IMG/VR virus record: IMGVR_UViG_3300043399_000272
Span: 196,149 to 260,148 of that record
DNA: 64,000 nt
Strand: one strand, 5' to 3'
Both the position numbers and the translations under genes were made by a program. This document shows, piece after piece, positions 34,404 through 64,000 of this stretch. Within the stretch, counting starts at the first letter, position 1, and each line of letters starts with the position of its first letter. Under the pieces are notes generated by a model that ran no database searches, was not told the DNA's origin, and saw only the letters and a list, made by a program, of their open reading frames with translations.

Positions 34404-37400
34404 ATGGCTCAACAATACATAGACTTTGGTACATTTCCAAACGATCCATCGGCTGATCCGATTCGATCAGCATTTCAGAAAATAAACGAAAACTTCAATG
34501 AACTTTACGGTACTTTTTTCTCGTCCGGTGTTACATCTATTACCACTACTGGTGGTATTACAGCTCCGGCAGGAGGAACAGGGGACGTATTAATTGAGGG
34601 TAATTTCCCTAGAATTCAGATTATTACAGGTAGTAATTTAACAGTTGGAGCAGGTGCACCTAACACTACCCAGTCAGCAAATATCACTACCTTTTCTGTT
34701 CCGTTTTATTTAGATTTAGCTAATTCGATTAATACACAATCAGCTACTTTTACAACAGGTGTAACTACATCTAATCTTAGCGTAGGCAACGTAGTAACTA
34801 GCTCATTAATTCCCAATGCATCTACCGGTCAATTAGGAAATAGTACCAATAGATGGGGTAATTTATTTGTTACTTCTAATATAAATTTAGGAGCAGCAGC
34901 CAATAGTCAAACGATTAGATCAAACACTTCAGGTGTAATTCTAACTAATCTTTTTGTAACATCAAACACTGTAATAGGTAATGCTAACATCACCGGATTA
35001 GTTACTGCAGGCAATGCTACTGTGACAGGTCTAACGACTACAAATAATTTAACAGTAACTGGAAATTTGATCGGTAACTTAATTCCTGATCAAGACGAAG
35101 TTTATAATTTAGGTAGCCCCACACGTAAGTTTAAAGAATTATTTCTTGCTGCGAATACTTTGACATTGGGTGCAGTTACAATATCAGCAGACTCAAATAG
35201 CATTATTGTTCCTAATTTATCAGTCACTGACACAATCAGTGTAGGTACGATAACTGCAGGATTTGTCGACGGTATAATAACTGCAACATCACAACCATTA
35301 ATTACTAGTTTGGGCGCATTAAGCAACTTGACTGTTGCTGGTTGTGTAGCGATTGGTAATACATTAATTGATTCTAACGGGGCAATCACAGTAGGTAGTA
35401 CAGTTATTGATCCTTCCGGTAACATTATACTACCGGCTAATGGTACAATTACTGGAACAGTTATTACTCCACCGGGCGGAACAGTTAGTGCTCCGGGTTC
35501 TAATACACAAATCTTATTCAATGATGACGGTAACTTAGCAGCAGTTCCAGGACTACAATTCAACAAAGTAACTAGTTTATTAAGTATTTCAGGTAATGTA
35601 GCAGGAGGAAACTTAGTATCTTCAGGTGCTCTATCAGTTACTGGTAACGGTAGTGTAGGCGGCACATTTAGTGCTACTGGAAATGTGAACGCTGGCAATT
35701 TAATTACCTTAGGTGTTTTAAGTGCTAGCGGCAATATTTCAGGCGGTAATATTTCAACTAATGGATTCTTACAAGTAGTAGGCAATGCTAGTTTGGGCAA
35801 TATTACAACAACTAGAATAGATGGTACTATAGTTAGTGTATCGGGTAATATTTCAGGCGCTAACTTAATTGCTAGCGGTATAATGCGAGTAGACGGTAAC
35901 GCAAACGTAGGTAACCTAACTACTAGTGGTTTAGTGTCAGCCGCAACAATAAATGCATCAGGAAATGTGTCTGCTGGTAATATTAGTGTTTCCGGATCAC
36001 TAGCAGTTGACACATTATCAGGAAATAACTTAAGTTCTAGTGGCAACTTAACTGTTACCGGTAATTCTTCTTTAGCAAATGCAATAGCTACAAGTCTATC
36101 TGCTATAGGTAATATTTCAAGTAGTAATTTAAATATTACCGGTAATTCTTCTTTAGCAAATGCAATAGCTACAAGTCTATCTGCTATAGGTAATATTTCA
36201 AGTAGTAACTTAATCATCACTGGTAATTCTACACTAGCTAATGCATTGGCTGCGAGTCTTGCAGCTACGGGTAATGTTTCAGGTGGAAACATATTGACTG
36301 GTGGACTAATTAATGCTACTGGTAATATATTAGGTGGTAACTTATCCACCACTGGTGTAGTTTCTGCTACAGGTAATGTTTCAGGTGGCAATATAACAAC
36401 TACAGGGTTAATCACTGCGAATGGCACCATCGTCGGCGGCAATCTATCCACTGCTGGTGTAGTTTCTGCTACAGGTAATGTTTCAGGTGGAAACTTAACT
36501 ACAAACGGATTAATTGTAGCTACAGGCAATGTCTCAGGTGGTAACTTATCTACTACAGGTGTAGTCTCTGCTACAGGTAATATATTAGGTGGTAACTTAT
36601 CTACTACAGGTGTAGTCTCTGCTACAGGTAATATATTAGGTGGTAACATTAATGCTAACGGTAGCGTTACAGGTAACTTGTTTAGTGCTAATTTCTTCAG
36701 CGGTGATGGAAACAGCATAACAAACTTGAATGCGTTAAATGCTAAGAATAAGATTGTGCCAACTGGTTTATTAATTGGTTCAGGAACAGCAACTATAACT
36801 TTCTCTACGCAATCTTTTGCCCCGTTTGATATTGGACAAACAGTAAATGTTTCAAACATTTTACCAAGTGGATTAAACGGTTCACAGACCATTACGTTCT
36901 GCAACGCAGACACATTAACATTTAGTACTGCACTAACCTCAAACGTTGGATTTGTGCCAGGTACATCAATAGTATCAGGTGACATTAAAGTTTCAAGTGC
37001 TATAAGTGCTGCTTCGGCAAATACTGCTAATTCTGCGAATACTGCTAACTCAGCAACGATTGCTGGACAAGTTACAGGTGCAACACAAGGAAACATCACA
37101 AGTGTAGGAACTTTAGTAGGATTGACTGTTGCTCCAACTGGATCAATAACCGGTGCTAATACTATTTCAGGTAATTTTATTTCAGGTAATTTTGTTCTTG
37201 CAAGTGTTACTAGTGGCATCGTTGCTTCTGGTACTACTCAAAGCACCGCATATCCGTTGATTAGTCAATATAATGTTGTTTCTACTTCTAGTACAGGAAC
37301 TGCTGATGGTGTACGTTTACCAACAGCTACAGTGGGTATGCAAGTTATTATCATCAATAATACTGCAAACAGTGTTAAAGTTTATCCAGCATCAAGTGCA

Positions 37401-37514
37401 AAAATAGATTCCCTAGCAACAAATGCATCATTCTCATTGGGTACAGGTGCAAGACTATTATTAGTAGCAACAGGGATTTCTCAGTGGTACACAATGGTTG
37501 GTGTTTACGGTTAA
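34404..37514 (+). CDS. long tail fibre-like protein with G/N-rich repeats
   Basis: GT.PND..AD.IRSAFQKINENFNELY N-terminus; ~17-aa TGNVSGGNL repeats. Confidence 0.8.
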   Translation: MAQQYIDFGTFPNDPSADPIRSAFQKINENFNELYGTFFSSGVTSITTTGGITAPAGGTGDVLIEGNFPRIQIITGSNLTVGAGAPNTTQSANITTFSVPFYLDLANSINTQSATFTTGVTTSNLSVGNVVTSSLIPNASTGQLGNSTNRWGNLFVTSNINLGAAANSQTIRSNTSGVILTNLFVTSNTVIGNANITGLVTAGNATVTGLTTTNNLTVTGNLIGNLIPDQDEVYNLGSPTRKFKELFLAANTLTLGAVTISADSNSIIVPNLSVTDTISVGTITAGFVDGIITATSQPLITSLGALSNLTVAGCVAIGNTLIDSNGAITVGSTVIDPSGNIILPANGTITGTVITPPGGTVSAPGSNTQILFNDDGNLAAVPGLQFNKVTSLLSISGNVAGGNLVSSGALSVTGNGSVGGTFSATGNVNAGNLITLGVLSASGNISGGNISTNGFLQVVGNASLGNITTTRIDGTIVSVSGNISGANLIASGIMRVDGNANVGNLTTSGLVSAATINASGNVSAGNISVSGSLAVDTLSGNNLSSSGNLTVTGNSSLANAIATSLSAIGNISSSNLNITGNSSLANAIATSLSAIGNISSSNLIITGNSTLANALAASLAATGNVSGGNILTGGLINATGNILGGNLSTTGVVSATGNVSGGNITTTGLITANGTIVGGNLSTAGVVSATGNVSGGNLTTNGLIVATGNVSGGNLSTTGVVSATGNILGGNLSTTGVVSATGNILGGNINANGSVTGNLFSANFFSGDGNSITNLNALNAKNKIVPTGLLIGSGTATITFSTQSFAPFDIGQTVNVSNILPSGLNGSQTITFCNADTLTFSTALTSNVGFVPGTSIVSGDIKVSSAISAASANTANSANTANSATIAGQVTGATQGNITSVGTLVGLTVAPTGSITGANTISGNFISGNFVLASVTSGIVASGTTQSTAYPLISQYNVVSTSSTGTADGVRLPTATVGMQVIIINNTANSVKVYPASSAKIDSLATNASFSLGTGARLLLVATGISQWYTMVGVYG
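36055..36208 (+). repeat. 81-nt-period tandem duplication in the fibre gene
   Basis: 36055-36127 is identical to 36136-36208. Confidence 0.85.
36536..36647 (+). repeat. 51-nt exact tandem repeat in the fibre gene
   Basis: Units start at 36536, 36587 and (partially) 36638. Confidence 0.85.
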
Positions 37515-49042: not shown

Positions 49043-51316
49043 ATGAATTCACCCGAAATTGAAGTAATTATTGAGCAAGCATTAAATTTGGCTAAAGAGA
49101 GGTCACACAAGTATTGTACACTTGAACATTTATTGCTTGCACTGATTACTCATCAGCCCTTTAAAAAGTGCTTAGATAGTTTTGGTGCAGATGTTGAAAC
49201 ACTAACCAAAGAAGTTACTCATTATATTGACACACTACATGCCATTGTAGTTGATGTTAGTAACGGAGAAGAAGTGCATCCTCGCAAAACTAATTCTCTC
49301 GAAAGAGTCATGAACCGAAGCATTACACAAGTATTGTTTACTGGTCGTAAAATGGTAACTACTATTGATTTGTATCTGAGTATTTCTAGCGAAACCAACA
49401 GTCATGCACATTATTACTTGCTGAAATATGGTATCACAAAGCAAGAATTTGTAGCACACTGGCAAAAGAATTATAAAAATCAGGATGCAGAAACTAAACT
49501 TACTGATTCGCAAGCATCTGAAATTCTCGAAGAATACACAGTTAATCTTAGCGAACTTGCACGTAACCATAAACTAGAACCGCTTGTGGGTCGTAGTGAA
49601 GAACTGGACGACATTATAAATGTGCTAGCTAAGAGATTCAAATCAAACGTACTAATGGTGGGGGATCCAGGTGTAGGCAAGACCGCTATCGTAGAGGGAC
49701 TAGCACAGCGTATTGCTGATGGTAAAGTACCTGAGTTTCTTAAGGACCATGAAGTATATTCAGTAGAAGTAGGTAACTTGCTTGCAGGTTCAAAGTATCG
49801 TGGAGATTTCGAAGAAAAGATCAAAGTAATCATTGAAGCACTGATTACAAAGAAAAAGGCTGTGTTGTTTATCGATGAAGCACATACTATGAAAGGTAGC
49901 GGGTCTTCAAATAACGGCAGTGTTGACTTTGCTAATATGATTAAGCCTGCAATCACAAAGGGTAATTTGAAAGTTATCGCAAGCACTACATGGGAAGAAT
50001 TCTATGAGTCCTTCGAAAAGGATCGTGCATTGATGCGTAGATTCTATCGTGTGGGTGTAGATGAACCTGATCGTGATTCTACGGTTCGCATTTTGACAGG
50101 GTTAAGTACTCGGTTGAATGACTTCCATGATGTGGATATTTCTCCTGACGCTATCACTGCGGCAGTAGATAGCGCAATTAGGTATTTGCATGACCGTAAA
50201 AACCCTGATAAGTCTATCGACTTGCTAGACGCCGCATGTGCAAAACAGCGTGTAGCTGATAACAAGGGTGCAGTCATTACTAAAGAAATGGTGTATGACC
50301 AAGTTGAACGTATTGCAGGAGTTCCAGCAGATAAACTCAAGGATCAAACAGTTGATAAGATTCAACTATTGGAATCTAATATCAAAGATAAATTGTATGG
50401 GCAAGAAGATACGGTAGATAAAGTTTTGGAACGTATTTATGTTAGCTTTGCTGGCATCGGAAATCAAAGTAAACCTATTGCAAGTTTCTTATTCTTGGGC
50501 CCTACTGGTACTGGTAAAACAGAATTGGCTAGACTGTTAAGTAAGAACCTAGATATGCCGCTAATCAAATATGACATGTCTGAATATTCTGAGAAATTCA
50601 ACGTTAGTGCTTTGCTAGGTGCACCTCCCGGATATGTTGGGTTTGGAGAAGGTAGTCTTGGTGGCGGCAAACTAATTAACGACTTGAGTAAAAATCCGCA
50701 CTCTATCTTGTTGTTTGATGAAGTAGAAAAAGCACACCCTGATATCTTTAATATTTTCTTGCAATTGCTTGACGACGGTAAAGTTACTGGTACTAATGGT
50801 AAGTCAGTAAATGCAAAGAACTGTATTGTTATTATGACTAGTAACTTGGGAAGTCAAGATGCAGAAAGAAACAATATTGGCTTTGGCAGTCAAGAAAAAT
50901 CAGGTGAAGATGATAAAGCCTTGAAGGACTTCTTCAAGCCTGAATTCAGAAATCGTATTGACTTGATTTGTAAATTCGGTAAACTTGATATGCTAGCAAT
51001 CAAGAAAATTGTCATTAAATTTACTGATGATTTGAAGAAGTCATTGAAAGATACCCATGATATTACTCTTAATTTGCGTGAATCAGTTGTTGAATATCTC
51101 GCTGAAAAGGGTTATGATAAGAAGATGGGTGCAAGACCACTGGCTCGAAAGATCGATGAATTGATTAGGGTTCCATTGTCAAAGAAGATTCTTTTTGAAC
51201 GTATTAAAAACGCAACTATTAACGTTAGCGTCGGGGATGATGACAAGATTGAATTCGAAATTCAACAAAAATTAACTGCTACGGTGAATGAAGATGGGAT
51301 TATTGAAGTCAGTTGA
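49043..51316 (+). CDS. clpA: ATP-dependent Clp protease ATPase subunit
   Basis: Clp N-domain, GDPGVGKT and GPTGTGKT AAA+ modules, IGF ClpP-docking loop, GARPL. Confidence 0.92.
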   Translation: MNSPEIEVIIEQALNLAKERSHKYCTLEHLLLALITHQPFKKCLDSFGADVETLTKEVTHYIDTLHAIVVDVSNGEEVHPRKTNSLERVMNRSITQVLFTGRKMVTTIDLYLSISSETNSHAHYYLLKYGITKQEFVAHWQKNYKNQDAETKLTDSQASEILEEYTVNLSELARNHKLEPLVGRSEELDDIINVLAKRFKSNVLMVGDPGVGKTAIVEGLAQRIADGKVPEFLKDHEVYSVEVGNLLAGSKYRGDFEEKIKVIIEALITKKKAVLFIDEAHTMKGSGSSNNGSVDFANMIKPAITKGNLKVIASTTWEEFYESFEKDRALMRRFYRVGVDEPDRDSTVRILTGLSTRLNDFHDVDISPDAITAAVDSAIRYLHDRKNPDKSIDLLDAACAKQRVADNKGAVITKEMVYDQVERIAGVPADKLKDQTVDKIQLLESNIKDKLYGQEDTVDKVLERIYVSFAGIGNQSKPIASFLFLGPTGTGKTELARLLSKNLDMPLIKYDMSEYSEKFNVSALLGAPPGYVGFGEGSLGGGKLINDLSKNPHSILLFDEVEKAHPDIFNIFLQLLDDGKVTGTNGKSVNAKNCIVIMTSNLGSQDAERNNIGFGSQEKSGEDDKALKDFFKPEFRNRIDLICKFGKLDMLAIKKIVIKFTDDLKKSLKDTHDITLNLRESVVEYLAEKGYDKKMGARPLARKIDELIRVPLSKKILFERIKNATINVSVGDDDKIEFEIQQKLTATVNEDGIIEVS

Positions 51317-52577: not shown

Positions 52578-53339
52578 ATGAAATTGTTTGAGGGCGGAAA
52601 CATTTGGCCTGATGTTGTAACTAATTTTGATCCAGGTGTAGTTGGGAAACCACTCACCGCCGCCACACAAAAATATCTAGAACCATTAGGTGCAACAGTT
52701 CACACAATAGGTAGCGCATGGAAGCCTAGATTTGATAAAGACGGCAACGTTGTTCCTAGCAATGACTTAGATGCTATGGTCGATCTTGCTGAATTACAAA
52801 AAGCATTTAACACTACTGATGCTAAAACAACAAGACAAGCATTAGATGATTATCTACAGAAACAAGGTCTAAAGACTTATAAAGCAGGGGTAACAGTTCA
52901 CACTAGAATGCCGTTAGGTGGAAAGTTTTATCAAGCTGACTTAAAGGTTGTACCGAACGCAGCCAAAGTTGCACAATTTCATAGACACGAAATACCTCAA
53001 GGCAGTCAATACAAAGGTGTCAACAAGCAACTTGTAATGAACGCACTTGCTAGCAGTCAACGTATGCTATGGAGTCCCGATGAAGGATTGTATGCAAGAG
53101 ATGCTAATGGTAAGAAAGCTGAATTATTAAGTGATGACTGGGATACGATTGCTCAGTATTTACTAGGCAAAGGTGCAACAGGAAATGATTTAGGCAGTGT
53201 TGAATCTATCATGGCAAAGATTCCTGATCCTAAGCGTAGAGAAGAAATAATGAATATGGCACGTTCAGGTCATAGTTGGCAAGCTGCAACTCCTAATGTG
53301 ACTGAATGGTTCCGTAGAGCAATGGATATGTTAAAATGA
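52578..53339 (+). CDS. Pol-beta-superfamily nucleotidyltransferase-like protein
   Basis: TIGS...SNDLDAMV, third Asp in YQADL; MKLFEG N-terminus. Confidence 0.6.
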   Translation: MKLFEGGNIWPDVVTNFDPGVVGKPLTAATQKYLEPLGATVHTIGSAWKPRFDKDGNVVPSNDLDAMVDLAELQKAFNTTDAKTTRQALDDYLQKQGLKTYKAGVTVHTRMPLGGKFYQADLKVVPNAAKVAQFHRHEIPQGSQYKGVNKQLVMNALASSQRMLWSPDEGLYARDANGKKAELLSDDWDTIAQYLLGKGATGNDLGSVESIMAKIPDPKRREEIMNMARSGHSWQAATPNVTEWFRRAMDMLK

Positions 53340-54460
53340 AAATTCAAACACTATTAGAAGCTGCTGGACAAGTTGGGCGTAAGTATCAACACATTGAAGA
53401 TTTAGTAATAGCTAATGGTAGTGCAGGTGGACTACATGCAGTTGAACGCATGAAGCACATGGTTGACAATTACGATTCAATTGAACTTAAGTGGGACGGT
53501 ATGCCAGTAGTATACTGGGGCCGTGATGAAAAAGGTGTCTTTAGAATGATTCCTAAGAATGCTTGGGCTTACTTAAAGTCAGGCAAGACACAAACTAGTT
53601 CAGGTGCAAGTACAATCATGAACAGCCCCGATGACGTTTATAAATTTGTTATGGGCACAGGAGACGGTGGAGAAGGTCGTGCAGGATTTGCAAAGCAATT
53701 TGCTAGCTTGTGGCCACTGTTCGAAAAGATAAGCCCTAAGCAAGGCTTCCTTGAAGGTGGTTTATTATTCTTCCCTGGTTCAATGCCTGTAGTTAATAAA
53801 AACACAAATACATACGATTTCAAACCTAATATTACTACATTCCATGTACCAGTAGATAGCAATTTGGGTAAGCGCATTGCTAATGCTAAGATGATGGTTG
53901 CTGCCACTGGTTACTATACACAGATGGGTTCAAGTGATGAACAGCGTTATCCGGATGCACAGAAACTAAGCACACCTGATGTTATTGTACAAGGCACAAC
54001 GTATGTTGAAGAAATGCCAGGTGTTAGCACAGCAGGTCTAGACAGAATTGAACAGTTCATAAGGACAAACGCTCAAAAAATTGACAACTACTTAGCACCT
54101 AAGAAGGGATTAAGTAATCCAGGTGGTGAGTTATACACTTATCTAAATAAACATTTACGCACAACAGGTCTGTTGAAAGACTTTCCTGCTTGGGCACAAC
54201 AGAATTTAAGTGCAGGTAAAGCACAAGCAATGTTAGCAGATACTGAAGGGTTAAAAGCTACATTGGGAGCAGTAGAAGCATTGTCTAATGAAAAGATGAA
54301 GATTATCAAGTCATTAAGTTTGGGACTTCACGGTGGTATCATGCAAACTAATCCTGAAGGATACGCACAAGCACATCCTGAGATTAATTTCAAGTATGAT
54401 CTGCCTGGACAATTCTTAAAACTTATTGACCAACTAAATTGGAAGCCAAGAGCATTATGA
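53336..54460 (+). CDS. ATP-grasp ligase/nucleotidyltransferase-like protein (KxDG)
   Basis: HIED, ELKWDG.P, F.PN, PEGY, LKLID. Confidence 0.55.
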   Translation: MKIQTLLEAAGQVGRKYQHIEDLVIANGSAGGLHAVERMKHMVDNYDSIELKWDGMPVVYWGRDEKGVFRMIPKNAWAYLKSGKTQTSSGASTIMNSPDDVYKFVMGTGDGGEGRAGFAKQFASLWPLFEKISPKQGFLEGGLLFFPGSMPVVNKNTNTYDFKPNITTFHVPVDSNLGKRIANAKMMVAATGYYTQMGSSDEQRYPDAQKLSTPDVIVQGTTYVEEMPGVSTAGLDRIEQFIRTNAQKIDNYLAPKKGLSNPGGELYTYLNKHLRTTGLLKDFPAWAQQNLSAGKAQAMLADTEGLKATLGAVEALSNEKMKIIKSLSLGLHGGIMQTNPEGYAQAHPEINFKYDLPGQFLKLIDQLNWKPRAL

Positions 54461-57356: not shown

Positions 57357-57384
57357 AAGAGGCTGTCATATGACAGCCTCTTTT
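57357..57384 (+). terminator. Rho-independent terminator
   Basis: AAGAGGCTGTCA/TGACAGCCTCTT plus TT, immediately followed by CATAAATA. Confidence 0.8.
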
Positions 57385-57396
57385 CATAAATACATT

Positions 57397-58485
57397 ATGC
57401 TTTTAAAAGAATTAGATAATTTTAAATTAAGTGATGCCCTATATTTTCACAAAAACCTGAATCCTGCTATTTTTGACGGGGATAATATGAACCCTGAAGT
57501 AAGGGAGCAGTTATTGACTATTGCTCAGGATTTTATAGAACATTTAGGCATATCCAACTTAGAAGTTAAAGATATTACTATCTCGGGAAGTAATGCTGCA
57601 TATTCCTACACTCGTCACAGTGATCTTGATTTACATATATTAGTTGACATGAATCAGTTCAACAACGATGACGTATATAGAGAATTGTTTGATGCTAAAA
57701 AGACTATATATAACGACCAACATGATATCAAAATAAATGACATTGACGTTGAATTATATGTACAAGACACAAATCAGCCCGTGATTAGTTTGGGAGAATA
57801 TTCAGTATTAAACGATAAATGGATTCGTCTGCCTAGAAAACACAGAGCAAATTTTGATCAAGCAGCAACTAAGTTAAAGTTTGAGAAAATTGCGAAACTA
57901 GCTGAATACGCCATTAAATCTAACAACTACGAAAAGATTAGTAGTGTTCTAAAGACTATCAAAAAGTATCGACAAGCCGGATTAGACTTAAATGGTGAGT
58001 TTGGCCCTGAAAATTTAGCATTTAAAGCATTGCGTAGTAAGGGTATTATTAAAAAGTTATATGAAAAATTAGATGACTTGCATAGTCGAGAATTAAGTTT
58101 ACCTGAAGATGCTCAATCTGGTTCCTTAAACAAACCTACGTTAAACGTAGTTGATTTAGCTAGGTTACATAAAGTAACTAAAGAACATATACAGAATCAA
58201 CTTAAATTAGGCATCAAAGTTGAAATGGAACATACAAGTAAATACGAAGTTGCAAAAGAAATTGCACTAGACCATTTAAAAGAAGATCCTAATTATTACT
58301 CAAAACTACATAAAGTTGGTCTAGAAGAATCTTCCGGGTATATCCCCAGTGAAAAAGAAAAAAATGATCCTAGATTTAAAACTGCACTAACAGTTGATGT
58401 AAAGCCTGATGCCATCGAAAAGAATGCAAAGGCTTTTGGCTTTAAAGTTACTAGGGCAGGTATTCCTCCATTGCTAAGAAAATAA
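57397..58485 (+). CDS. Pol-beta-superfamily nucleotidyltransferase with extra C-terminal modules
   Basis: GSNA.Y.Y...SDLDLH, VELYVQD, EF..ENL.FK.LR; C-terminal GIKVE.EH...IALDHL.E.P.YY. Confidence 0.75.
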   Translation: MLLKELDNFKLSDALYFHKNLNPAIFDGDNMNPEVREQLLTIAQDFIEHLGISNLEVKDITISGSNAAYSYTRHSDLDLHILVDMNQFNNDDVYRELFDAKKTIYNDQHDIKINDIDVELYVQDTNQPVISLGEYSVLNDKWIRLPRKHRANFDQAATKLKFEKIAKLAEYAIKSNNYEKISSVLKTIKKYRQAGLDLNGEFGPENLAFKALRSKGIIKKLYEKLDDLHSRELSLPEDAQSGSLNKPTLNVVDLARLHKVTKEHIQNQLKLGIKVEMEHTSKYEVAKEIALDHLKEDPNYYSKLHKVGLEESSGYIPSEKEKNDPRFKTALTVDVKPDAIEKNAKAFGFKVTRAGIPPLLRK

Positions 58486-58497
58486 TAAGGATAAGAG

Positions 58498-60885
58498 ATG
58501 GCAACAGATCCAAGAACAATAATAAATGATAATGAGGATGCTGCGTTAAATCCAAGTGGTGTGGTGCCAGTATCGGCCCCCAACACTAACGCCACACTGC
58601 AAACAGTAACAGTTCAATACACTACTCCTCCGTATTACGGAGTACAAGACTTGCAAATTATAAATGATCCAGGTGGCAATACTGACGGTGCAATTCAATT
58701 CAATGCTAGTAATAGATTCGGCGGTGACGGTAATCTTCGTTGGGATAACAAAAATAAAACATTAAATGTTTCGGGTAACATTAGACTAACAGGTGAGCTA
58801 CAAGGTAGAATTTACACATCTACTGCCAAATTCAAACTATACGGCGGAGTAGCTAATTATGTTTTGAGTACAGACGGAAACGGTAACTTATCTTGGGTAG
58901 ATGTTGCAGATTCAACGTACGGTAATAGTAATGTAGCAGCATACTTAGCTAATTATACAGGTAATGTTAATGCAAGTAATATTAATGTATCTGATACCGC
59001 GTATTTGTACAATATATCAAGCACAGGTACAGCGACAATTACTAACCTGGTGATTCATTCTACCGGGACTGCTAACTTAGGACCACTATCAAATATTAAA
59101 ATTTCAGGTGGCTCTAATGGACAATTTTTAAGTACAGACGGTAATGGTAACTTATCTTGGGTTAACATAAGCAATGCTAATTATGCAACTTATTCAGGAA
59201 CTGCTAACGTAGCTAACAGCGTTTCGGTGGCAAATGTTACTGGTATAGGAAATATTGCAACTACTAACTATGATGGCAACGCAAGCAATGTATTACATGG
59301 TGACGGTACGTGGAGTCCTACACCAACTAGCGTAGCTAATGCCAACTACGCTAATACTGCAAACATAGCGAATGTTTCTTATTCTATTGACGGTGCTAAT
59401 GTCAATGGAACAGTAGCCAACGCAAACTATGCTATCTACTCAGGTACAGCAAACACTGCTAATTCAGTAGCAGTAGGAAACGTGACTGGCATCGGTAATA
59501 TTGCTACATTAAATTTAGATGGCAATGCAAGCAACATACTATATGGTAATGGTGTATTTGCGGCTGCTCCTAGTGGCGGTGGGTATGGTAATAGTAATGT
59601 CGCATCTTTCCTAGCAAGTTTTGGATCTAATACAATCACTACTACAGGTAACGTAAGCGTTGGTAACATCACTGCTACTAACCTAGGTAATATAAGCAGC
59701 ATAAACAAAGACGGCAACGCAAGCAATATTCTCTATGGTAATGGAGTATTTGCTGCACCCACAACACCGGCAGCTGCTGGCAGCAATACACAAGTTACAT
59801 TTAATGATGCTAACGTATCAAATGGCAGTAGTAGTTTCACATATAATAAAACTACAGGTACATTAACAGTACTGGGTGTGGCTAATACTGGTATTAGTGC
59901 AGGTGACTTTGGTGTTGTAAGTACTGAATTACCAAATACAGTAGTAAGTTTCACAGCTAATGTTAACAGTTATACCCAAGTAACACTACAGAACAAGAAT
60001 ACAGGTGCTGATGCTACAGCAGATTATATATTGACCGCAGATAACGGCACTGATACAGTTAATTACTTAGACTTGGGTATTATTAATAGCGGTTATGATG
60101 CTAATACTCCAACTAATAGTTTAGGAAACATAGTTTATGCTGCTGACAGTTACTTATATGCTCAAGGTAATGTGAGCAATACAAGTCAGCCAGGTGGTAA
60201 CTTAGCAATTGGTACAACTGTTGCTGGCAAATCTGTTAAGATTTTTGCAGGTGGCACCAGTAACTCAAACATCGTTGCTAATATTTCTAATACAGGTGTT
60301 GCAGTTACTGGTAATTTAACTACCACAATTAATGTAATTGCTACAGGAAATGTTAGTGGAAGTACATTAATTTCTACGAACGCATCAGGAGACGAAGGTG
60401 GCGAACTTCAATTAGCTAAAGCACCAAACAGTACATTATCTGGTAATATTATTGTAGATTCCTACATAAACAGAGTACGAGTATTTGACGGGGGCGGCAC
60501 AAATCGCGGAATGTATTTTGATATCGCTAATAGTCCAGCAGGCGTAGGTGCAGCAGTGGGTTATCGTGATATTCCTCAAGTTACTTTCTCAGGTAATGCA
60601 ACATTGGCAGCAACAGATGCAGGTAAACATTATTATTCTCAATTGTCTACTGCGAACACACTAACGATACCTAACAATGCAAGTGTTTCATTTAGTACTG
60701 GTGCAACTATAAACATTATAAATCAAGGAACAGGAAATATAACTATCGCTCAGGGAACAGGTGTTTCATTGTATTTGGCTGGTAATTCTACTAGTGCTAA
60801 TAGAACACTCACTTCGTACGGTATAGCATCTATAACCAAAGTTTCAACTGATACCTGGTTTATATCTGGAGTGGGGTTGTTATAA
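58498..60885 (+). CDS. tail fibre-like protein
   Basis: Repeated LSTDGNGNLSWV and GNASN(I/V)L.G.G; C-terminal TDAGK...TIP...F..G...W.ISG.L. Confidence 0.75.
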   Translation: MATDPRTIINDNEDAALNPSGVVPVSAPNTNATLQTVTVQYTTPPYYGVQDLQIINDPGGNTDGAIQFNASNRFGGDGNLRWDNKNKTLNVSGNIRLTGELQGRIYTSTAKFKLYGGVANYVLSTDGNGNLSWVDVADSTYGNSNVAAYLANYTGNVNASNINVSDTAYLYNISSTGTATITNLVIHSTGTANLGPLSNIKISGGSNGQFLSTDGNGNLSWVNISNANYATYSGTANVANSVSVANVTGIGNIATTNYDGNASNVLHGDGTWSPTPTSVANANYANTANIANVSYSIDGANVNGTVANANYAIYSGTANTANSVAVGNVTGIGNIATLNLDGNASNILYGNGVFAAAPSGGGYGNSNVASFLASFGSNTITTTGNVSVGNITATNLGNISSINKDGNASNILYGNGVFAAPTTPAAAGSNTQVTFNDANVSNGSSSFTYNKTTGTLTVLGVANTGISAGDFGVVSTELPNTVVSFTANVNSYTQVTLQNKNTGADATADYILTADNGTDTVNYLDLGIINSGYDANTPTNSLGNIVYAADSYLYAQGNVSNTSQPGGNLAIGTTVAGKSVKIFAGGTSNSNIVANISNTGVAVTGNLTTTINVIATGNVSGSTLISTNASGDEGGELQLAKAPNSTLSGNIIVDSYINRVRVFDGGGTNRGMYFDIANSPAGVGAAVGYRDIPQVTFSGNATLAATDAGKHYYSQLSTANTLTIPNNASVSFSTGATINIINQGTGNITIAQGTGVSLYLAGNSTSANRTLTSYGIASITKVSTDTWFISGVGLL

Positions 60886-62351
60886 TGGCTGGTATATTAA
60901 TGCCCATTATGGCAATTGCTGGTCAAGGAGGTATTATAGTACCTAGTGAAATTCCAAACTTGAACCTTTGGTACGATGCATCCGTTAGTGACGCTGCGTA
61001 TATACAATCACCGGGTGGTACTGCTCCCACTAACGGCGGTCCTGTTAAAGCTCTAATTGATAAAATGGGTTTTGGACGAAACGTTGACCAAGCAGCATCC
61101 AACCGTCAACCGCTTTGGCGCGCCAATCAACAAAATGGTTTAGGTACTATACAATTTGACGGAATTAATGATACTTTCACCTTAAATCCAATAGCATGGG
61201 CTTTGAGTTTACCTGGACAGACTACTTTTATTGTTGTTAAATTAGCTGCACAAGCGAATCAAATGCACGTGATGGCAACTAATACGGGCGGTTTCACATT
61301 TAACTTGAATGGTACTAACTGGGCAGTAGAAACTGGTGGCGGAATAGCATCAAGTAGTCAAGGCAGTGATACAACTAATTATCACTATATGGGTATGATT
61401 TTTGATGGTAGTCAAACTAATGCAGATATAACTACTCAGAATAATTTACGGGTGAGGTTCAGATATGACGGAGTACCGCAAACACTCACGTTCAGTGCCA
61501 ACGCCAATACCACTACATCAGCATCTGCAAATACATTAAACATTGGTTCAGATGACGCAGGAAACGCCAACTTCCTTAATGGATATATAGGCGAAATGAT
61601 GATCTGGACTAGAACATTAACTGCTACTGAAATTTCGCAAGTAGAAAACTATTTAAAGACTAAGTGGGGCATTACTAATCCAGTTACAAGTAATTTAGTG
61701 TTATCATATAATCCAGCAGTTTCTACAAGTTACGCAGGCTCCGGCACTACTATAAACAGTTTAGTATCACCTAACTTACCGGGTACATTAAGTAACATTA
61801 CATATACTACTCCTTATTTTAGCTATAATGGTAGCACCTCACAAGTAAGTATTGCAGACAATGCTGCACTAGAACCTGGATCAGGTAATTGGACTATGGA
61901 AGTATGGTTCAATGCTGCTTCAACATCAGGAAGTACAGTTATTCTAGGTAAATTCAATAATGGTGGTATGGCAGCACATGTTTCTTATTCTATCAGAACT
62001 TCAAGTGCTAGTCTCTTTGCCCAGATAGGTGATGGGACAGGAGCATTTGTAAATTCTACTAGTTATACTTTCTCTACAAATACTTGGTATCAGGTTGTTT
62101 ATGTTTGGCAAAACGGTGCAACTAAAACATTAACTACGTATATAAACGGCACAAATATAGGAACAGTATCTCATACTTTATCAAGTATACTAAATTCAAC
62201 AAATCCGCTGTATCTAGGACGTTACAACGGGGGTGAATACGCACAAAACTTTAACGGAAGAATTGGTATAACAAGATTGTATAATAGCACTTTGTCAGCA
62301 GCAGAAGTATTGCAGAACTATAATGCATCTAGGTCAACATACGGTCTATGA
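60885..62351 (+). CDS. LamG/concanavalin-A-like lectin domain virion protein
   Basis: LWYDAS, FDG.ND, GYIGE, WTMEVW, WYQVV, YING, FNGRIG..R.YN..LS..EV.QNY. Confidence 0.8.
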   Translation: MAGILMPIMAIAGQGGIIVPSEIPNLNLWYDASVSDAAYIQSPGGTAPTNGGPVKALIDKMGFGRNVDQAASNRQPLWRANQQNGLGTIQFDGINDTFTLNPIAWALSLPGQTTFIVVKLAAQANQMHVMATNTGGFTFNLNGTNWAVETGGGIASSSQGSDTTNYHYMGMIFDGSQTNADITTQNNLRVRFRYDGVPQTLTFSANANTTTSASANTLNIGSDDAGNANFLNGYIGEMMIWTRTLTATEISQVENYLKTKWGITNPVTSNLVLSYNPAVSTSYAGSGTTINSLVSPNLPGTLSNITYTTPYFSYNGSTSQVSIADNAALEPGSGNWTMEVWFNAASTSGSTVILGKFNNGGMAAHVSYSIRTSSASLFAQIGDGTGAFVNSTSYTFSTNTWYQVVYVWQNGATKTLTTYINGTNIGTVSHTLSSILNSTNPLYLGRYNGGEYAQNFNGRIGITRLYNSTLSAAEVLQNYNASRSTYGL

Positions 62352-62382: not shown

Positions 62383-62405
62383 AAAAGCCCTTAAAGGGGC
62401 TTTTT
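62383..62405 (+). terminator. Rho-independent terminator
   Basis: AAAAGCCCTT-AA-AGGGGCTTTTT. Confidence 0.8.
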
Positions 62406-62460
62406 CATTTATAGCTGTTAAAAGATAAAAACGATAAATACTCTAATAGCGGAATTTATT

Positions 62461-64000
62461 ATGAAAATAACCTCACTTTTAGAAGCAATGACGACCCCCG
62501 GGAGCGATCCGGCATCTAATCAGAGCCAACAAGCACCTAGGTTTGGTCGTGATCCTCATGTTTTAGAAGATGATGAAAAATTAGATGAAACTACTACATC
62601 AGGGGCGGTAGCATCAGTAGCCCAACCAATGGGAGCTATGCAACGCCGTGGAAAAGGTAGTATATTTTCGGGTGTAAAAACTAGCAAAAAATTTCCTAAT
62701 AGCCAAGCTGTAAAAGAAGATGTAAATGAGGCTAAGGTTGAAGAAGTTAATCCTGTTGTAAATGCTATTGCACGCCGAATTCTTGGCCAACGTATGGATT
62801 TATTGAAAAAATATGGACCTAAGTACGTAATGCAAGCAATTGATGATGTGTCTGATTCAGTCGGAGAAGTACAAGAAATAGGTTCAAGCGATGTGAGTGG
62901 TTGGGTAATTCAAGTAGAACGTAACTTGAAAAATAAACTTAATCAGTATGATAAACCAATGAGTGTGATAGATAATATTGAAGAAGCACAGAAATGTCCG
63001 CATTGCAACGGTCCTATGTTCAGCGATTTATTGTTAGCTGAAAAGAAAGATGCTTGCTATCACAAAGTTCGCAGTCGCTACAAAGTATGGCCAAGTGCTT
63101 ATGCATCGGGTGCATTAGTTCAGTGCCGTAAAAAAGGTGCTGCTAACTGGGGCAACAAGAGCAAGAACGAAGGTGTGGCGGAAGGCAAGGAAGACAAGGT
63201 TAAGCAACTAAAGCAAGATTATGCTACAGCAGTTCATTGGAGTAAGAATGATACCAATCCGCATAAGCGTGAGGCTGCTCGTCAAAAGGCTGAAAAGATT
63301 AAGCGTCATTTAGAAACACAATACAAACAAGGTGTGGCGGAGGCGGCTGGATTATATGGTCCTTTCACCGTAACCATCAACACAGGTGAGCGTCCTAAAT
63401 CAAGAACAAAAACCAAAAAGTTCCGTCGTGAAGATGATGCTATATTGTGGGCACAAGATTGGTTAGAAGATTTTTCACAATACCCATATGCCTCGGCCGA
63501 AGTCACAGATCCAGATGGCAATGTTGTTTGGACAACTGATGAAGAAGATAGTCCATGGGCACCTGCAAAACAGCAAGGTGTGGCGGAAGAAATAATTCAT
63601 GTAGGTCATCGTAATTCAAAAGGTGATTGGGTTAAGACTAGCACACATAGTAACTATGCTGATGCAGAAGCCGCAATGAAAGAATTAGAAAGACAAGGAA
63701 AAAAAGGTGTCCAACATCGTTATGACAATAAGGGCAACATTGATCCTGGTGCTATGATGACCGCAAGACCTGATACTGGTATGATGGAAGAACAAAATCC
63801 ACACACTAGCGCAATCGGTCGTGCTTTATATCGTGACCTAAGCAAGGAAAAGAAAGCAAGTCCTCAACAAGTTCAGCGTAACAAAGAGCGTTGGGCAAAG
63901 CGTCAGGCTGATATGGTAGGTGATCCTGCTCCACAACATTATCGTGACGAGTTGGCTAAAGATGCCGCAGAGTATAGAAAAAAGCAAGGTGTGGCGGAAG
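62461..64000 (+). CDS. modular polyprotein-like putative internal virion protein (open past the window end, absent from the ORF track)
   Basis: Manual translation shows no stop from ATG 62461 to 64000 (at least 513 codons): MKITSLLEA...DACYHKVRSRYKVWPSAYASGALVQCRK...EGVAEG...QGVAEA...QGVAEE...QGVAE. Late promoter at 62433. Confidence 0.85.
   Translation, partial: MKITSLLEAMTTPGSDPASNQSQQAPRFGRDPHVLEDDEKLDETTTSGAVASVAQPMGAMQRRGKGSIFSGVKTSKKFPNSQAVKEDVNEAKVEEVNPVVNAIARRILGQRMDLLKKYGPKYVMQAIDDVSDSVGEVQEIGSSDVSGWVIQVERNLKNKLNQYDKPMSVIDNIEEAQKCPHCNGPMFSDLLLAEKKDACYHKVRSRYKVWPSAYASGALVQCRKKGAANWGNKSKNEGVAEGKEDKVKQLKQDYATAVHWSKNDTNPHKREAARQKAEKIKRHLETQYKQGVAEAAGLYGPFTVTINTGERPKSRTKTKKFRREDDAILWAQDWLEDFSQYPYASAEVTDPDGNVVWTTDEEDSPWAPAKQQGVAEEIIHVGHRNSKGDWVKTSTHSNYADAEAAMKELERQGKKGVQHRYDNKGNIDPGAMMTARPDTGMMEEQNPHTSAIGRALYRDLSKEKKASPQQVQRNKERWAKRQADMVGDPAPQHYRDELAKDAAEYRKKQGVAE
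63170..63998 (+). repeat. interspersed in-frame direct repeat AAGGTGTGGCGGA x4
   Basis: Identical 13-mers start at 63170, 63329, 63575 and 63986 (periods 159, 246 and 411 nt), with unique sequence between them. Confidence 0.92.

What the first reader, a model, noticed from the sequence alone, without database searches (positions are those of the whole stretch)
62461..64000. Cassette-like polyprotein array: unrelated in-frame modules joined by an invariant GC-rich DNA repeat (x-G-V-A-E)
Seen: one unbroken ORF from 62461 to the window end, missed by the track because its stop lies outside the window. It carries four identical copies of AAGGTGTGGCGGA (63170, 63329, 63575, 63986; mostly CAAGGTGTGGCGGAAG), spaced 159, 246 and 411 nt (53, 82 and 137 codons), with mutually unrelated domain-sized inserts between them. 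The synonymous positions (GGT GTG GCG) are fixed, and GTG/GCG are visibly uncommon in this AT-rich genome, so the conservation appears to be at the DNA level, not only the peptide. Established: T4 prohead protease gp21 cuts head-packaged proteins after Glu in hydrophobic-x-E contexts, which V-A-E fits, and the gene has a late promoter and a MKITSLLEA leader. Inference: the repeat is both a recombination/insertion site for gaining, losing or shuffling mini-domain cassettes and a maturation cleavage site. The gene would then be an expandable, integron-like library of small effectors packaged into the capsid and released for injection.
Basis: partly seen in the sequence, partly recalled or inferred. 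Interest (0 to 1): 0.88.

Follow-up and report, generated by a model that had tools for sequence, protein, structure and literature searches.

The report
Phage polyprotein with a standard linker
A late gene of an uncultured T4-related jumbo phage strings unrelated small protein modules together with one short linker that is spelled with the same DNA letters in hundreds of other uncultured phages, and modules are swapped between phages exactly at that linker.

Summary
ORF 62461 to the window end carries four exact in-frame copies of AAGGTGTGGCGGA (x-G-V-A-E) between unrelated modules.

It is far larger than one gene. IMG/VR holds at least 200 contigs with such arrays, and the protein database returned at least 7,850 unnamed matches.

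With synonymous positions left free in the search, 75% of KQGVAEG sites use exactly GGT GTG GCG. Invariant peptides inside modules of the same contigs use mixed codons. The constraint is therefore on DNA or RNA as well as on the peptide.

Cassette exchange at the linker is shown directly:
- Near-identical genes differ by whole modules bounded by linkers.
- 19 of 25 right-hand breakpoints of ≥93%-identical blocks fall at the linker end.
- Window modules recur in many different contexts.

Cleavage after the Glu is inferred, not shown. In its favour:
- Linker variants keep hydrophobic-x-Glu, the T4 gp21-type motif.
- N-terminal leaders end in the same motif.
- Signal peptides start right after junctions.
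- The gene sits in T4-type late, head and packaging clusters.

Capsid packaging and injection are plausible but untested. "Integron-like" holds only as an analogy. No description was found in the literature searched.

The parts
62383..62404 (+). Terminator-like hairpin followed by a T run, after the upstream Laminin_G_3 structural gene (60885-62351)
   Evidence: 9-pair stem, 4 G-C pairs; 0.2 expected in shuffles; for the upstream gene
62433..62440 (+). T4 late-promoter-like box GATAAATA, 28 nt upstream of the ATG
   Evidence: NATAAATA lies at -25 to -34 of 12 of 46 window ORFs, including tail tube and adaptor genes. ATAAATA occurs 24 times on the + strand and 6 times on the - strand
62461..64000 (+). 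Polyprotein ORF, 513 codons, open at the 3' end (contig end)
62461..62484 (+). N-terminal leader M-K-I-T-S-L-L-E ending in hydrophobic-x-Glu and followed by Ala; candidate targeting and cleavage signal
   Evidence: 139 of 193 homologues have hydrophobic-x-E ending at residues 6-13 (mode 8-9), followed mostly by A/S/G. Only 6 of 45 control ORFs of the window do
62485..62745 (+). First module (to residue 95), shared at 50-71% identity with syntenic orthologues whose downstream cassettes differ
62746..62988 (+). Module M1b (NPVVNAI...IGSSDVSGW family). In other polyproteins it sits at other positions, usually between linkers
62989..63183 (+). Module M1c: CxxC plus the KVWPSAYASGALV domain, also present in 365 cyanomyovirus records; ends with linker 1
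   Evidence: AF2 model pLDDT 69.5 with no PDB fold match
63169..63183 (+). Linker 1: GAA GGT GTG GCG GAA (E-G-V-A-E)
63184..63342 (+). Cassette M2 (53 aa), ending with linker 2 (CAA GGT GTG GCG GAG at 63328-63342)
   Evidence: 15 full-length homologues (81-100% aa identity) in 15 different contexts. 14 are preceded by a linker; all 15 are followed by a linker or a close variant of it (one QGVVE)
63343..63588 (+). Cassette M3 (82 aa), ending with linker 3 (CAA GGT GTG GCG GAA at 63574-63588)
   Evidence: 68 hits, 45 of them full length, with differing neighbours
63589..63789 (+). Cassette M4a (67 aa), ending in the degenerate junction G-M-M-E (63778-63789)
   Evidence: occurs without M4b in other proteins, there followed for example by S-G-V-A-E
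63790..63999 (+). Cassette M4b (70 aa), ending with linker 4 (CAA GGT GTG GCG GAA at 63985-63999). The contig ends at 64000

Best explanation
The gene is a late-expressed polyprotein of a T4-superfamily jumbo phage. It is built from independent cassettes (median about 100 aa in relatives) joined by one standard linker. The linker consensus is K-Q-G-V-A-E|G, encoded almost everywhere as AAG CAA GGT GTG GCG GAA GGC.

Shown here: the linker is the boundary at which whole cassettes are exchanged, inserted and deleted between phages. Its nucleotides are held constant far beyond what the peptide requires.

Inferred: the peptide is a hydrophobic-x-Glu processing site. It is most likely cut by the phage's gp21-type prohead protease after an N-terminal leader of the same type brings the precursor into the prohead. 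One gene would then yield a changeable set of small proteins (enzymes, DNA- or RNA-acting modules, exported proteins) that are delivered or released as separate products.

Also inferred: the fixed DNA spelling persists because it is the shared homology that lets a cassette recombine into any other array. A cassette that keeps the majority spelling has the most possible partners. That is a self-reinforcing convention and needs no dedicated enzyme.
For: - Nucleotide fixity. With synonymous sites free in the search pattern, 105 of 140 KQGVAEG sites use exactly GGTGTGGCGGA. Over 246 sites in 98 contigs, GGT is 95%, GTG 84%, GCG 88% and GAA 91%. Invariant peptides WPSAYASG, IGSSDVSGW and CWxGY in the same contigs use mixed codons. 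The exact fraction is flat across GC terciles at 0.81, 0.84 and 0.73. Syntenic orthologues whose flanking genes are only 48-57% identical in protein still carry the exact linker.
- Exchange. L138 and L194 are 99-100% identical in DNA on both sides of a replaced block bounded by QGVAE and QGITE. One L194 cassette is 98.9% identical to a cassette of the otherwise different L022. L004 and L083 are 98.7% identical up to the base after linker 1, then unrelated. 19 of 25 right-hand breakpoints of ≥93%-identical blocks lie at -2 to +8 of a linker end. In all-against-all blastn, 38% of internal right ends lie within 12 nt of a linker against 4.6% for random positions. Window cassettes M2, M3, M4a and M4b recur in many contexts. 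Ten proteins with the same leader module have ten different cassette sets.
- Peptide constraint. One-mismatch variants are 69 synonymous to 40 non-synonymous, against 10:26 expected if neutral. The Glu is almost invariant, the Val position stays V/M/I, and there are no out-of-frame copies. T4 gp21 cuts after L/I-X-E and giant-phage homologues after A/S/G-X-E (PMC9026906, PMC5694885).
- Cleavage hints. Tat and Sec signal peptides always begin right after an x-x-E junction. The leader motif is present in 139 of 193 homologues.
- Context. There is a late-promoter-like box. T4-type TerL, sheath, portal, protease or MCP genes lie within 15 kb in 23 loci, and the order portal-protease-scaffold-MCP-(240-aa ORF)-polyprotein occurs in L070, with L033 and L111 holding parts of the same order. 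The window's sheath is 44% identical to PA5oct-type jumbo phages.
- Not an assembly artefact. Identical full-length proteins occur on up to 14 contigs from NCBI, JGI and ENA.
Against: - There is no proteomic or biochemical evidence that the linker is cut, by any protease.
- The window does not contain the phage's protease, portal or MCP genes.
- MCPs of related contigs have L-L-E|G and L-M-E|G-type sites, not GVAE.
- Signal-peptide modules would be an odd cargo for a capsid.
- The linker also contains AAGGUG, a 5-nt match to the anti-Shine-Dalgarno sequence, and the window phage uses SD sites. An RNA-level reason for the fixed codons is therefore not excluded.
- Eighteen to 21 nt is short for efficient homologous recombination.
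- Linker variants show no genome-specific clustering (p=0.61). This rules out local gene conversion but does not separate selection from cassette flux.
Confidence: 0.58

Rival explanations
1. The fixed codons serve translation or mRNA, not recombination. Each linker would be a pause element (SD-like AAGGUG followed by the rare codons GUG GCG) that separates the folding or processing of successive modules. Recombination at linkers would be a by-product of their identity.
For: AGGUG pairs with the anti-SD sequence. The two best-conserved synonymous positions (CAA 98%, GGT 97%) are the ones that create AAGGTG. 20 of 46 window ORFs have AGGA, GGAG or GAGG upstream. GTG and GCG are rare codons here. 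There is one global consensus with no genome-specific dialect, as expected for a universal partner such as the ribosome.
Against: A pause at the linker leaves the last 30-40 residues of the upstream module still inside the ribosome tunnel, so it is badly placed to help that module fold. The same spelling holds from 33% to 48% GC, where codon rarity differs. GCG GAA GGC is also fixed without any SD-like content. Exchange at linkers is directly observed whatever the reason for the fixity.
Confidence: 0.2
2. The polyprotein is processed in the infected cell's cytoplasm by another protease (host-encoded, or a dedicated phage enzyme). Its modules would act late in the producing cell or in its envelope, and would not be packaged and injected.
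For: Modules with canonical Sec (AxA) or Tat (RRxFLK) signal peptides start right after junctions. They need a free N-terminus and a cytoplasmic start. HicA-like, GNAT, deaminase and ParB-like modules need not be virion cargo.
Against: No protease domain was found in eight polyproteins or in the window protein. The gene sits among head and packaging genes. The leader and linker share the gp21-type motif. Two cyanophage records annotate the homologue as a structural protein, which is weak evidence.
Confidence: 0.25
3. The linker is only a flexible inter-domain spacer in an uncleaved multi-domain protein. The array would work as one large polyvalent protein.
For: No cleavage data exist. Polyvalent proteins can be packaged unprocessed, as the N4 virion RNA polymerase is (PMC5512222).
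Against: A spacer does not need an invariant Glu and a hydrophobic residue two positions before it. Signal peptides are placed exactly after junctions. N-terminal leaders put the same motif at the same distance from the first module as the linkers do. Linkers at C-termini are rare, 3 of 137.
Confidence: 0.12
4. The apparent shuffling is an assembly artefact: short-read assemblers join different phages at the shared 21-nt linker.
For: The linker is a repeat present in many co-occurring phages. Contigs often break in or near these genes: the window contig ends 2 nt after a linker. 3 of 49 whole contigs have a linker within 30 nt of an end against 0.72 expected.
Against: Twenty-one nt is below the final k-mer sizes of the usual pipelines; this rests on general knowledge, not on a test here. 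Identical full-length proteins were recovered from independent assemblies and sources, up to 14 contigs. The L194 replacement would need several switches and a return to the same partner.
Confidence: 0.04

Closest known systems
T4 internal head proteins (IPI-III, Alt): capsid targeting sequence plus gp21 cleavage
   Same: The gene sits in a T4-superfamily phage. It has a short N-terminal leader ending in hydrophobic-x-Glu, and its cut sites fit L/I-X-E. It is a diverse, fast-changing set of small proteins, as T-even internal proteins are described (PMC3012670, PMC9026906).
   Different: Here many proteins are fused in one ORF and separated by a repeated internal site. There is no sequence homology to any annotated internal protein family. 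Packaging is untested.
Polyvalent proteins of phages and conjugative elements (Iyer et al. 2017, PMC5512222)
   Same: One polypeptide carries many unrelated domains in highly variable architectures. It lies near late and virion genes and includes ParB-like, nucleotidyltransferase and zincin-like domains. Processing into units is predicted.
   Different: That paper's text never uses the word 'linker', so it describes no standard linker. It predicts processing by an in-cis metallopeptidase, and no peptidase domain was found in the window protein. No LPD-type Pfam domain was detected.
PeSL-mediated modular shuffling in T4-type phages (PMC2839356, PMC4122927)
   Same: Short conserved sequences bracket variable units, and insertions, deletions and replacements between close relatives occur at them, in T4-type genomes.
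   Different: PeSLs are intergenic promoter plus stem-loop cassettes that flank whole genes. The linker here is 18-21 nt, coding and in frame, and it has no promoter or hairpin.
Conserved-motif recombination inside T-even adhesin genes (gp38 glycine-rich motifs; PMC3157838), and the cassette exchange of polymorphic toxin loci noted in PMC5512222
   Same: Conserved coding motifs delimit hypervariable segments, and exchanges occur within or near the conserved motifs.
   Different: In those systems the motifs are structural parts of a single folded domain or a single pre-toxin boundary, and segment order is fixed. Here number, order and identity of complete domains all vary, and one spelling is shared across very distant phages.
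Integron gene cassettes
   Same: An expandable array of exchangeable units with a common boundary sequence.
   Different: There is no integrase and no attC-type inverted repeat. Cassettes are fused in frame rather than being separate ORFs, and there is no evidence of site-specific recombination.

Membership tests
T4-type internal head proteins | N-terminal targeting leader removed at a hydrophobic-x-Glu site | tested here: met
   The window protein starts M-K-I-T-S-L-L-E|A. The pattern is present in 139 of 193 homologues against 6 of 45 control ORFs. This tests the pattern only, not function.
T4-type internal head proteins | gp21-type prohead protease encoded by the same phage | tested here: inconclusive
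   It is found beside polyprotein genes in L070, L033, L141 and L154. It is not in the 64-kb window, and the rest of the 260-kb contig was not available.
T4-type internal head proteins | Cleaved products present in the virion and injected | not testable with these tools
   This needs virion mass spectrometry of an isolate or of a viral concentrate.
T4-type internal head proteins | Sequence homology to known IP or Alt families | tested here: not met
   PHROG hits are only to families of unknown function (phrog_727, 38880, 3477). There are no Pfam, NCBIfam or PDB hits.
Polyvalent proteins (Iyer et al. 2017) | Two to 15 unrelated domains in one polypeptide with variable architectures | tested here: met
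Polyvalent proteins (Iyer et al. 2017) | Signature domains (metallopeptidase, DdrB-type ParB, LPD domains and others) | tested here: inconclusive
   Relatives carry ParB_N, NTP_transf_2, GNAT, a deaminase, Amidoligase_2 and HExxH motifs. No LPD or peptidase Pfam hit was found, and the window protein has none at all.
Polyvalent proteins (Iyer et al. 2017) | Location among late or virion genes | tested here: met
Integron cassettes | Integron integrase next to the array | tested here: not met
   No integrase family appears among the eight proteins encoded between 52578 and the window end, the polyprotein included (PHROGs; five of them also against Pfam), or in the syntenic locus L281.
Integron cassettes | attC-type imperfect inverted repeat at each cassette end; each cassette a separate ORF | tested here: not met
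   The consensus AAGCAAGGTGTGGCGGAAGGC is not palindromic, and information content drops to background outside it. The cassettes are fused in frame.
PeSL modular shuffling | Promoter plus stem-loop motif flanking whole genes | tested here: not met
   The linker is coding and 18-21 nt long, and the flanks are not conserved.
PeSL modular shuffling | Indels and replacements between close relatives bounded by the conserved motif | tested here: met
   L004/L083 and L138/L194; 19 of 25 right-hand breakpoints.

The most novel reading that the evidence does not exclude
The 21-nt linker would be a population-wide docking standard: a natural in-frame adaptor that turns single protein domains into mobile genetic units shared by very different T4-superfamily phages. 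It might be recognised by a dedicated sequence-specific nuclease, annealase or recombinase, and cassettes might move through free intermediates. That would be a new class of mobile element, the in-frame domain cassette. It would also be a prokaryotic-virus counterpart of exon shuffling, coupled to a protease site so that every new insertion is automatically released as a separate protein.
Probability: 0.18. Interest if true: 0.95.

Novelty: new variant of a known kind. Interest (0 to 1): 0.85.

Why it matters
If the model holds, one late gene works as a plug-in rack for small effectors. Any cassette that keeps the standard linker can be dropped into any array and is set free by the same protease.

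This would explain how uncultured T4-related phages turn over host-takeover and counter-defence functions quickly. It would also place thousands of "hypothetical proteins" in one framework.

It gives a simple rule (cut after V-A-E) for splitting these ORFs into functional units before annotation or structure prediction.

It offers a clean natural case for testing whether selection can hold synonymous sites fixed for the sake of recombinational exchangeability.

Practically, assemblies break in these genes, so they are probably under-represented and mis-annotated in viromes.

Tried and rejected
- Megablast of the region against 50,697 phage records gave no match. Cultured relatives share only the KVWPSAYASG module, all in cyanomyoviruses apart from a few marine single-cell and roseophage records, and the two examined have no GVAE linkers.
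- Extending the ORF failed. The JGI contig ends at the linker, and two Logan assemblies stop 630 nt into the gene. An exact 29-mer across the last junction found nothing in metagenome contigs.
- No function could be assigned to the window modules. There were no Pfam, NCBIfam or PDB sequence hits. The AF2 model of M1c (pLDDT 69.5) had no fold match.
- A prophage or cellular origin is rejected. An 18-mer scan of 185,579 species genomes gave 56 hits. Most lie in genomes above 55% GC and count as chance; the few lower-GC single hits are not linker arrays. One 8.9-kb contig in a lake Bacteroidetes MAG carries a true array.
- Intragenomic gene conversion as the cause of linker identity is rejected. 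Variants do not cluster by genome (p=0.61).
- A "cassette = module + 3' linker" structure, as with attC, is rejected. Only 3 of 137 complete genes end within 12 aa of a linker.
- Codon rarity alone is unlikely. The exact spelling is equally frequent across GC terciles.
- Contig ends exactly at linkers are only modestly enriched: 3 against 0.72 expected within 30 nt, and 6 against 2.36 within 100 nt. This is suggestive of population heterogeneity, not proof.
- Single-linkage clustering of modules collapsed into one giant component, because many "modules" are still multi-domain. It was not used for the architecture claims.
- Literature searches for GVAE, phage polyproteins and the DUFs involved found no description of this linker.
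Full report
**Observation.** The region is as described. An ATG at 62461 opens a frame that runs 513 codons to the last base of the window. The 13-mer AAGGTGTGGCGGA is present exactly four times (63170, 63329, 63575, 63986), only on the + strand. It is spaced by 159, 246 and 411 nt and always reads x-G-V-A-E in frame. Chance gives 0.79 matches even with two mismatches allowed. The inserts are mutually unrelated by BLASTP. In the window's own genes GTG is 10.8% of Val codons and GCG 7.1% of Ala codons. The triplet GGT GTG GCG therefore has probability 0.004 per G-V-A, or 2.6e-10 for four copies. A fifth, degenerate junction (G-M-M-E, 63778-63789) divides the last insert into two units that occur apart elsewhere.

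**The window is the end of a contig.** L117 and L221 show that the window is the last 64 kb of JGI contig 3300043399 Ga0451681_0000005 (260,148 nt), which stops 2 nt after the fourth repeat. Two independent Logan assemblies of the same phage stop 630 nt into the same gene. No longer copy was found.

**The linker is not a peculiarity of this gene.** About 40 of them hold 2-7 copies, spaced almost always by multiples of three. The translated ORFs, roughly 240 to more than 1,700 aa, are strings of unrelated segments separated by [K/E/Q][Q/E/K]-G-V-A-E|[G/A/E/D/S]. A protein search returned at least 7,850 matches (candidate cap), essentially all unnamed or called 'hypothetical protein'. Of the best 120, 105 carry one to nine GVAE motifs. 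Among representative genomes of 185,579 bacterial and archaeal species only one true array turned up, on an 8.9-kb contig binned with a lake Bacteroidetes MAG. This is therefore a feature of uncultured, apparently lytic phages.

**DNA-level conservation, tested without circularity.**
- A second scan left all synonymous positions free (AARCARGGNGTNGCNGARGG). Of 140 matches, 105 (75%) use exactly GGT GTG GCG. In the 98 contigs not fetched by the first scan the figure is 83 of 115.
- Over all 246 x-G-V-A-E-x sites of those 98 contigs, Gly is GGT in 95%, Val GTG in 84%, Ala GCG in 88% and Glu GAA in 91%. The following Gly is mostly GGC.
- In the same contigs the invariant module peptides WPSAYASG, IGSSDVSGW and CWxGY use mixed codons. 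One Ala position, for example, is GCT 8, GCC 6, GCA 3, GCG 1.
- The consensus is AAG CAA GGT GTG GCG GAA GGC, and information content falls to background immediately outside it.
- The exact spelling is equally frequent in contigs of 33-38%, 38-42% and 42-48% GC.
- It survives in syntenic orthologues whose flanking genes are only 48-57% identical at protein level.
- Variants are not clustered by genome (permutation p=0.61). There is one global standard rather than local homogenisation.

**Peptide-level constraint.** Among in-frame 12-mers one mismatch from the consensus, 69 are synonymous and 40 non-synonymous, against 10:26 if neutral. The non-synonymous forms are mainly DVAE, GMAE, GVEE and GVSE. 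The Glu is nearly invariant, the residue two before it stays V/M/I, and the residue between them is free. No out-of-frame copy exists in 151 polyprotein ORFs. This is the short motif of T4-type prohead proteases: L/I-X-E for gp21, and A-X-E or S/A/G-X-E for giant-phage homologues, always cutting after Glu (PMC9026906, PMC5694885).

**Cassette exchange at the linker is shown.**
- *Near-identical genes.* L138 and L194 are 99.1% and 100% identical in DNA over 1,040 and 891 nt on either side of a replaced block bounded by QGVAE and QGITE. One cassette in L194 is 98.9% identical to a cassette in the otherwise different L022. L004 and L083 are 98.7% identical up to the base after linker 1, then carry unrelated cassettes, then are 98.2% identical again.
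- *Statistics.* 19 of 25 internal right-hand breakpoints of ≥93%-identical blocks fall within -2 to +8 nt of a linker end, and many blocks are single cassettes sitting at different positions. In all-against-all blastn, 38% of internal right ends lie within 12 nt of a linker end against 4.6% of random positions.
- *The window's own cassettes.* M2 has 15 full-length homologues (81-100% identity) with 15 different neighbour pairs; 14 are preceded by a linker and all are followed by a linker or a close variant of it. M3 has 45 full-length homologues. M4a and M4b occur separately.
- *Orthologues.* Ten proteins that share the window's N-terminal module have ten different cassette sets. One of them lies in the same syntenic position, downstream of the Laminin_G_3 structural gene, in a 300-kb contig.

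**Context.**
- The window belongs to a T4-superfamily jumbo myovirus. It has a 1,169-aa sheath 44% identical to PA5oct-type phages, two tube-like genes, a clamp loader and a DnaB-type helicase.
- The gene follows a terminator-like hairpin and has GATAAATA 28 nt before the ATG. That box lies at -25 to -34 of 12 of 46 window ORFs, including tail genes.
- In 23 related loci, T4-type TerL, sheath, portal, protease, MCP or UvsW genes lie within the fetched 15 kb. L070 shows the order portal, gp21-type protease, scaffold, MCP, a 240-aa ORF, then the polyprotein. L033 (from the protease onward) and L111 (MCP, the 240-aa ORF, polyprotein) hold parts of the same order.
- Cyanomyoviruses carry a homologous multi-module, Lys-rich protein next to the terminase genes, but without GVAE linkers. 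Two records call it a structural protein.

**What the cassettes are.** Relatives contain GNAT acetyltransferases, a dCMP-type deaminase, ParB_N, a nucleotidyltransferase, Amidoligase_2, HicA-like modules, HExxH motifs and several DUFs (DUF6321, DUF5872, DUF6934). Internal modules have a median length near 100 aa and a median pI of 9. The window's own modules have no assignable function.

**Evidence bearing on cleavage (indirect).**
- Tat (RRxFLK) and Sec-type (positive end, hydrophobic core, AxA) signal peptides occur inside these ORFs. In every case they begin directly after an x-x-E junction, often the canonical linker. Such signals need a free N-terminus.
- 139 of 193 homologues start with a leader ending in hydrophobic-x-Glu at residues 6-13, followed by A/S/G, against 6 of 45 control ORFs. 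The first module starts at the same distance from that Glu as internal modules do from the linker Glu.
- Linkers at C-termini are rare, 3 of 137, as expected for a separator.

None of this identifies the protease or the compartment.

**Mechanism proposed.**
- *Shown:* a standard in-frame linker marks cassette boundaries. Cassettes move between arrays at it. The linker is constrained both as a peptide and as nucleotides.
- *Inferred, in decreasing confidence:* the linker is cut after Glu (about 0.7). The enzyme is the gp21-type prohead protease, so the precursor is brought into the prohead and the products leave with the DNA (about 0.45). The nucleotide spelling is kept because it is the common homology for exchange, a frequency-dependent convention (about 0.5). 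The main alternative for that last step is an RNA or translation role of the SD-like AAGGUG and the rare codons.

**Comparison with known systems.** The array works like T4 internal proteins (leader plus gp21 site) and like polyvalent proteins (many domains, one gene, predicted processing). It evolves like PeSL-bracketed genes or gp38 hypervariable segments (recombination at conserved motifs). It is not a sequence member of any of these families, and it is not an integron. The literature searched, including the polyvalent-protein survey, describes no such linker.

**Limits.** All relatives are metagenomic. Chimeric assembly at the linker is unlikely, because identical proteins come from independent assemblies and the replacements would need multiple switches, but long reads have not been examined. 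The host is unknown.

Noticed in passing
window 63998-64000; L221, L222, L223: The 260-kb JGI contig ends 2 nt after the fourth linker. Two independent Logan assemblies of the same phage both stop 630 nt into the gene, inside the KVWPSAYASG module. Assemblies seem to break systematically in this gene, so it may be polymorphic in the population or repeated in the genome.
   Followed up: partly
L070 7870-8592, L033 3241-3987, L111 1956-2678: A conserved 240-aa ORF sits between the major capsid gene and the polyprotein gene in three related contigs. Its N-terminus looks like a GIY-YIG homing-endonuclease motif (my reading of the sequence, not a database hit). A nuclease next to a recombination-prone gene may be relevant or may be coincidence.
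   Followed up: no
window 63778-63789: GGT ATG ATG GAA (G-M-M-E) is a decayed linker between two cassettes that are separate units elsewhere. It suggests that old junctions drift away from the standard spelling.
   Followed up: partly
window 53336-54460 and 57370-58485: Neighbouring stand-alone genes carry DUF6267 (weak hit) and a weak nucleotidyltransferase match plus DUF5661. DUF6267 also appears inside a polyprotein relative (P0120), so modules may move between stand-alone genes and arrays.
   Followed up: no
window 34404-37514 (+) and 35102-37219 (-): A 1,036-aa Thr/Asn/Gly/Ser-rich, fibre-like repeat protein contains a 705-aa ATG-started ORF on the opposite strand. This is probably a compositional artefact of the repeats.
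   Followed up: partly
window 49043-51316: The phage encodes a 757-aa ClpB/ClpA-type double AAA+ protein (Clp_N, two AAA domains, ClpB_D2-small; phrog_4871 'ATP-dependent protease'). A chaperone or unfoldase in a phage that may process polyproteins could be worth a look.
   Followed up: no
L194 (polyprotein, junction before the cassette shared with L022): The linker at the left edge of the recently acquired cassette reads Q-G-V-A-A instead of Q-G-V-A-E, so the Glu is lost at a junction that is otherwise standard.
   Followed up: no
P0147-P0155 (relatives of window cassette M4a): Several polyproteins place a HicA-like mRNA-interferase domain (PF07927) directly after an M4a-type cassette. Toxin-type modules are therefore part of the cassette pool.
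   Followed up: no
L004 and L083, C-terminal third: A second type of junction (E-G-x-V-V on both sides of an inserted 60-aa module) bounds an indel between two 98%-identical genes. GVAE may not be the only exchange point.
   Followed up: no
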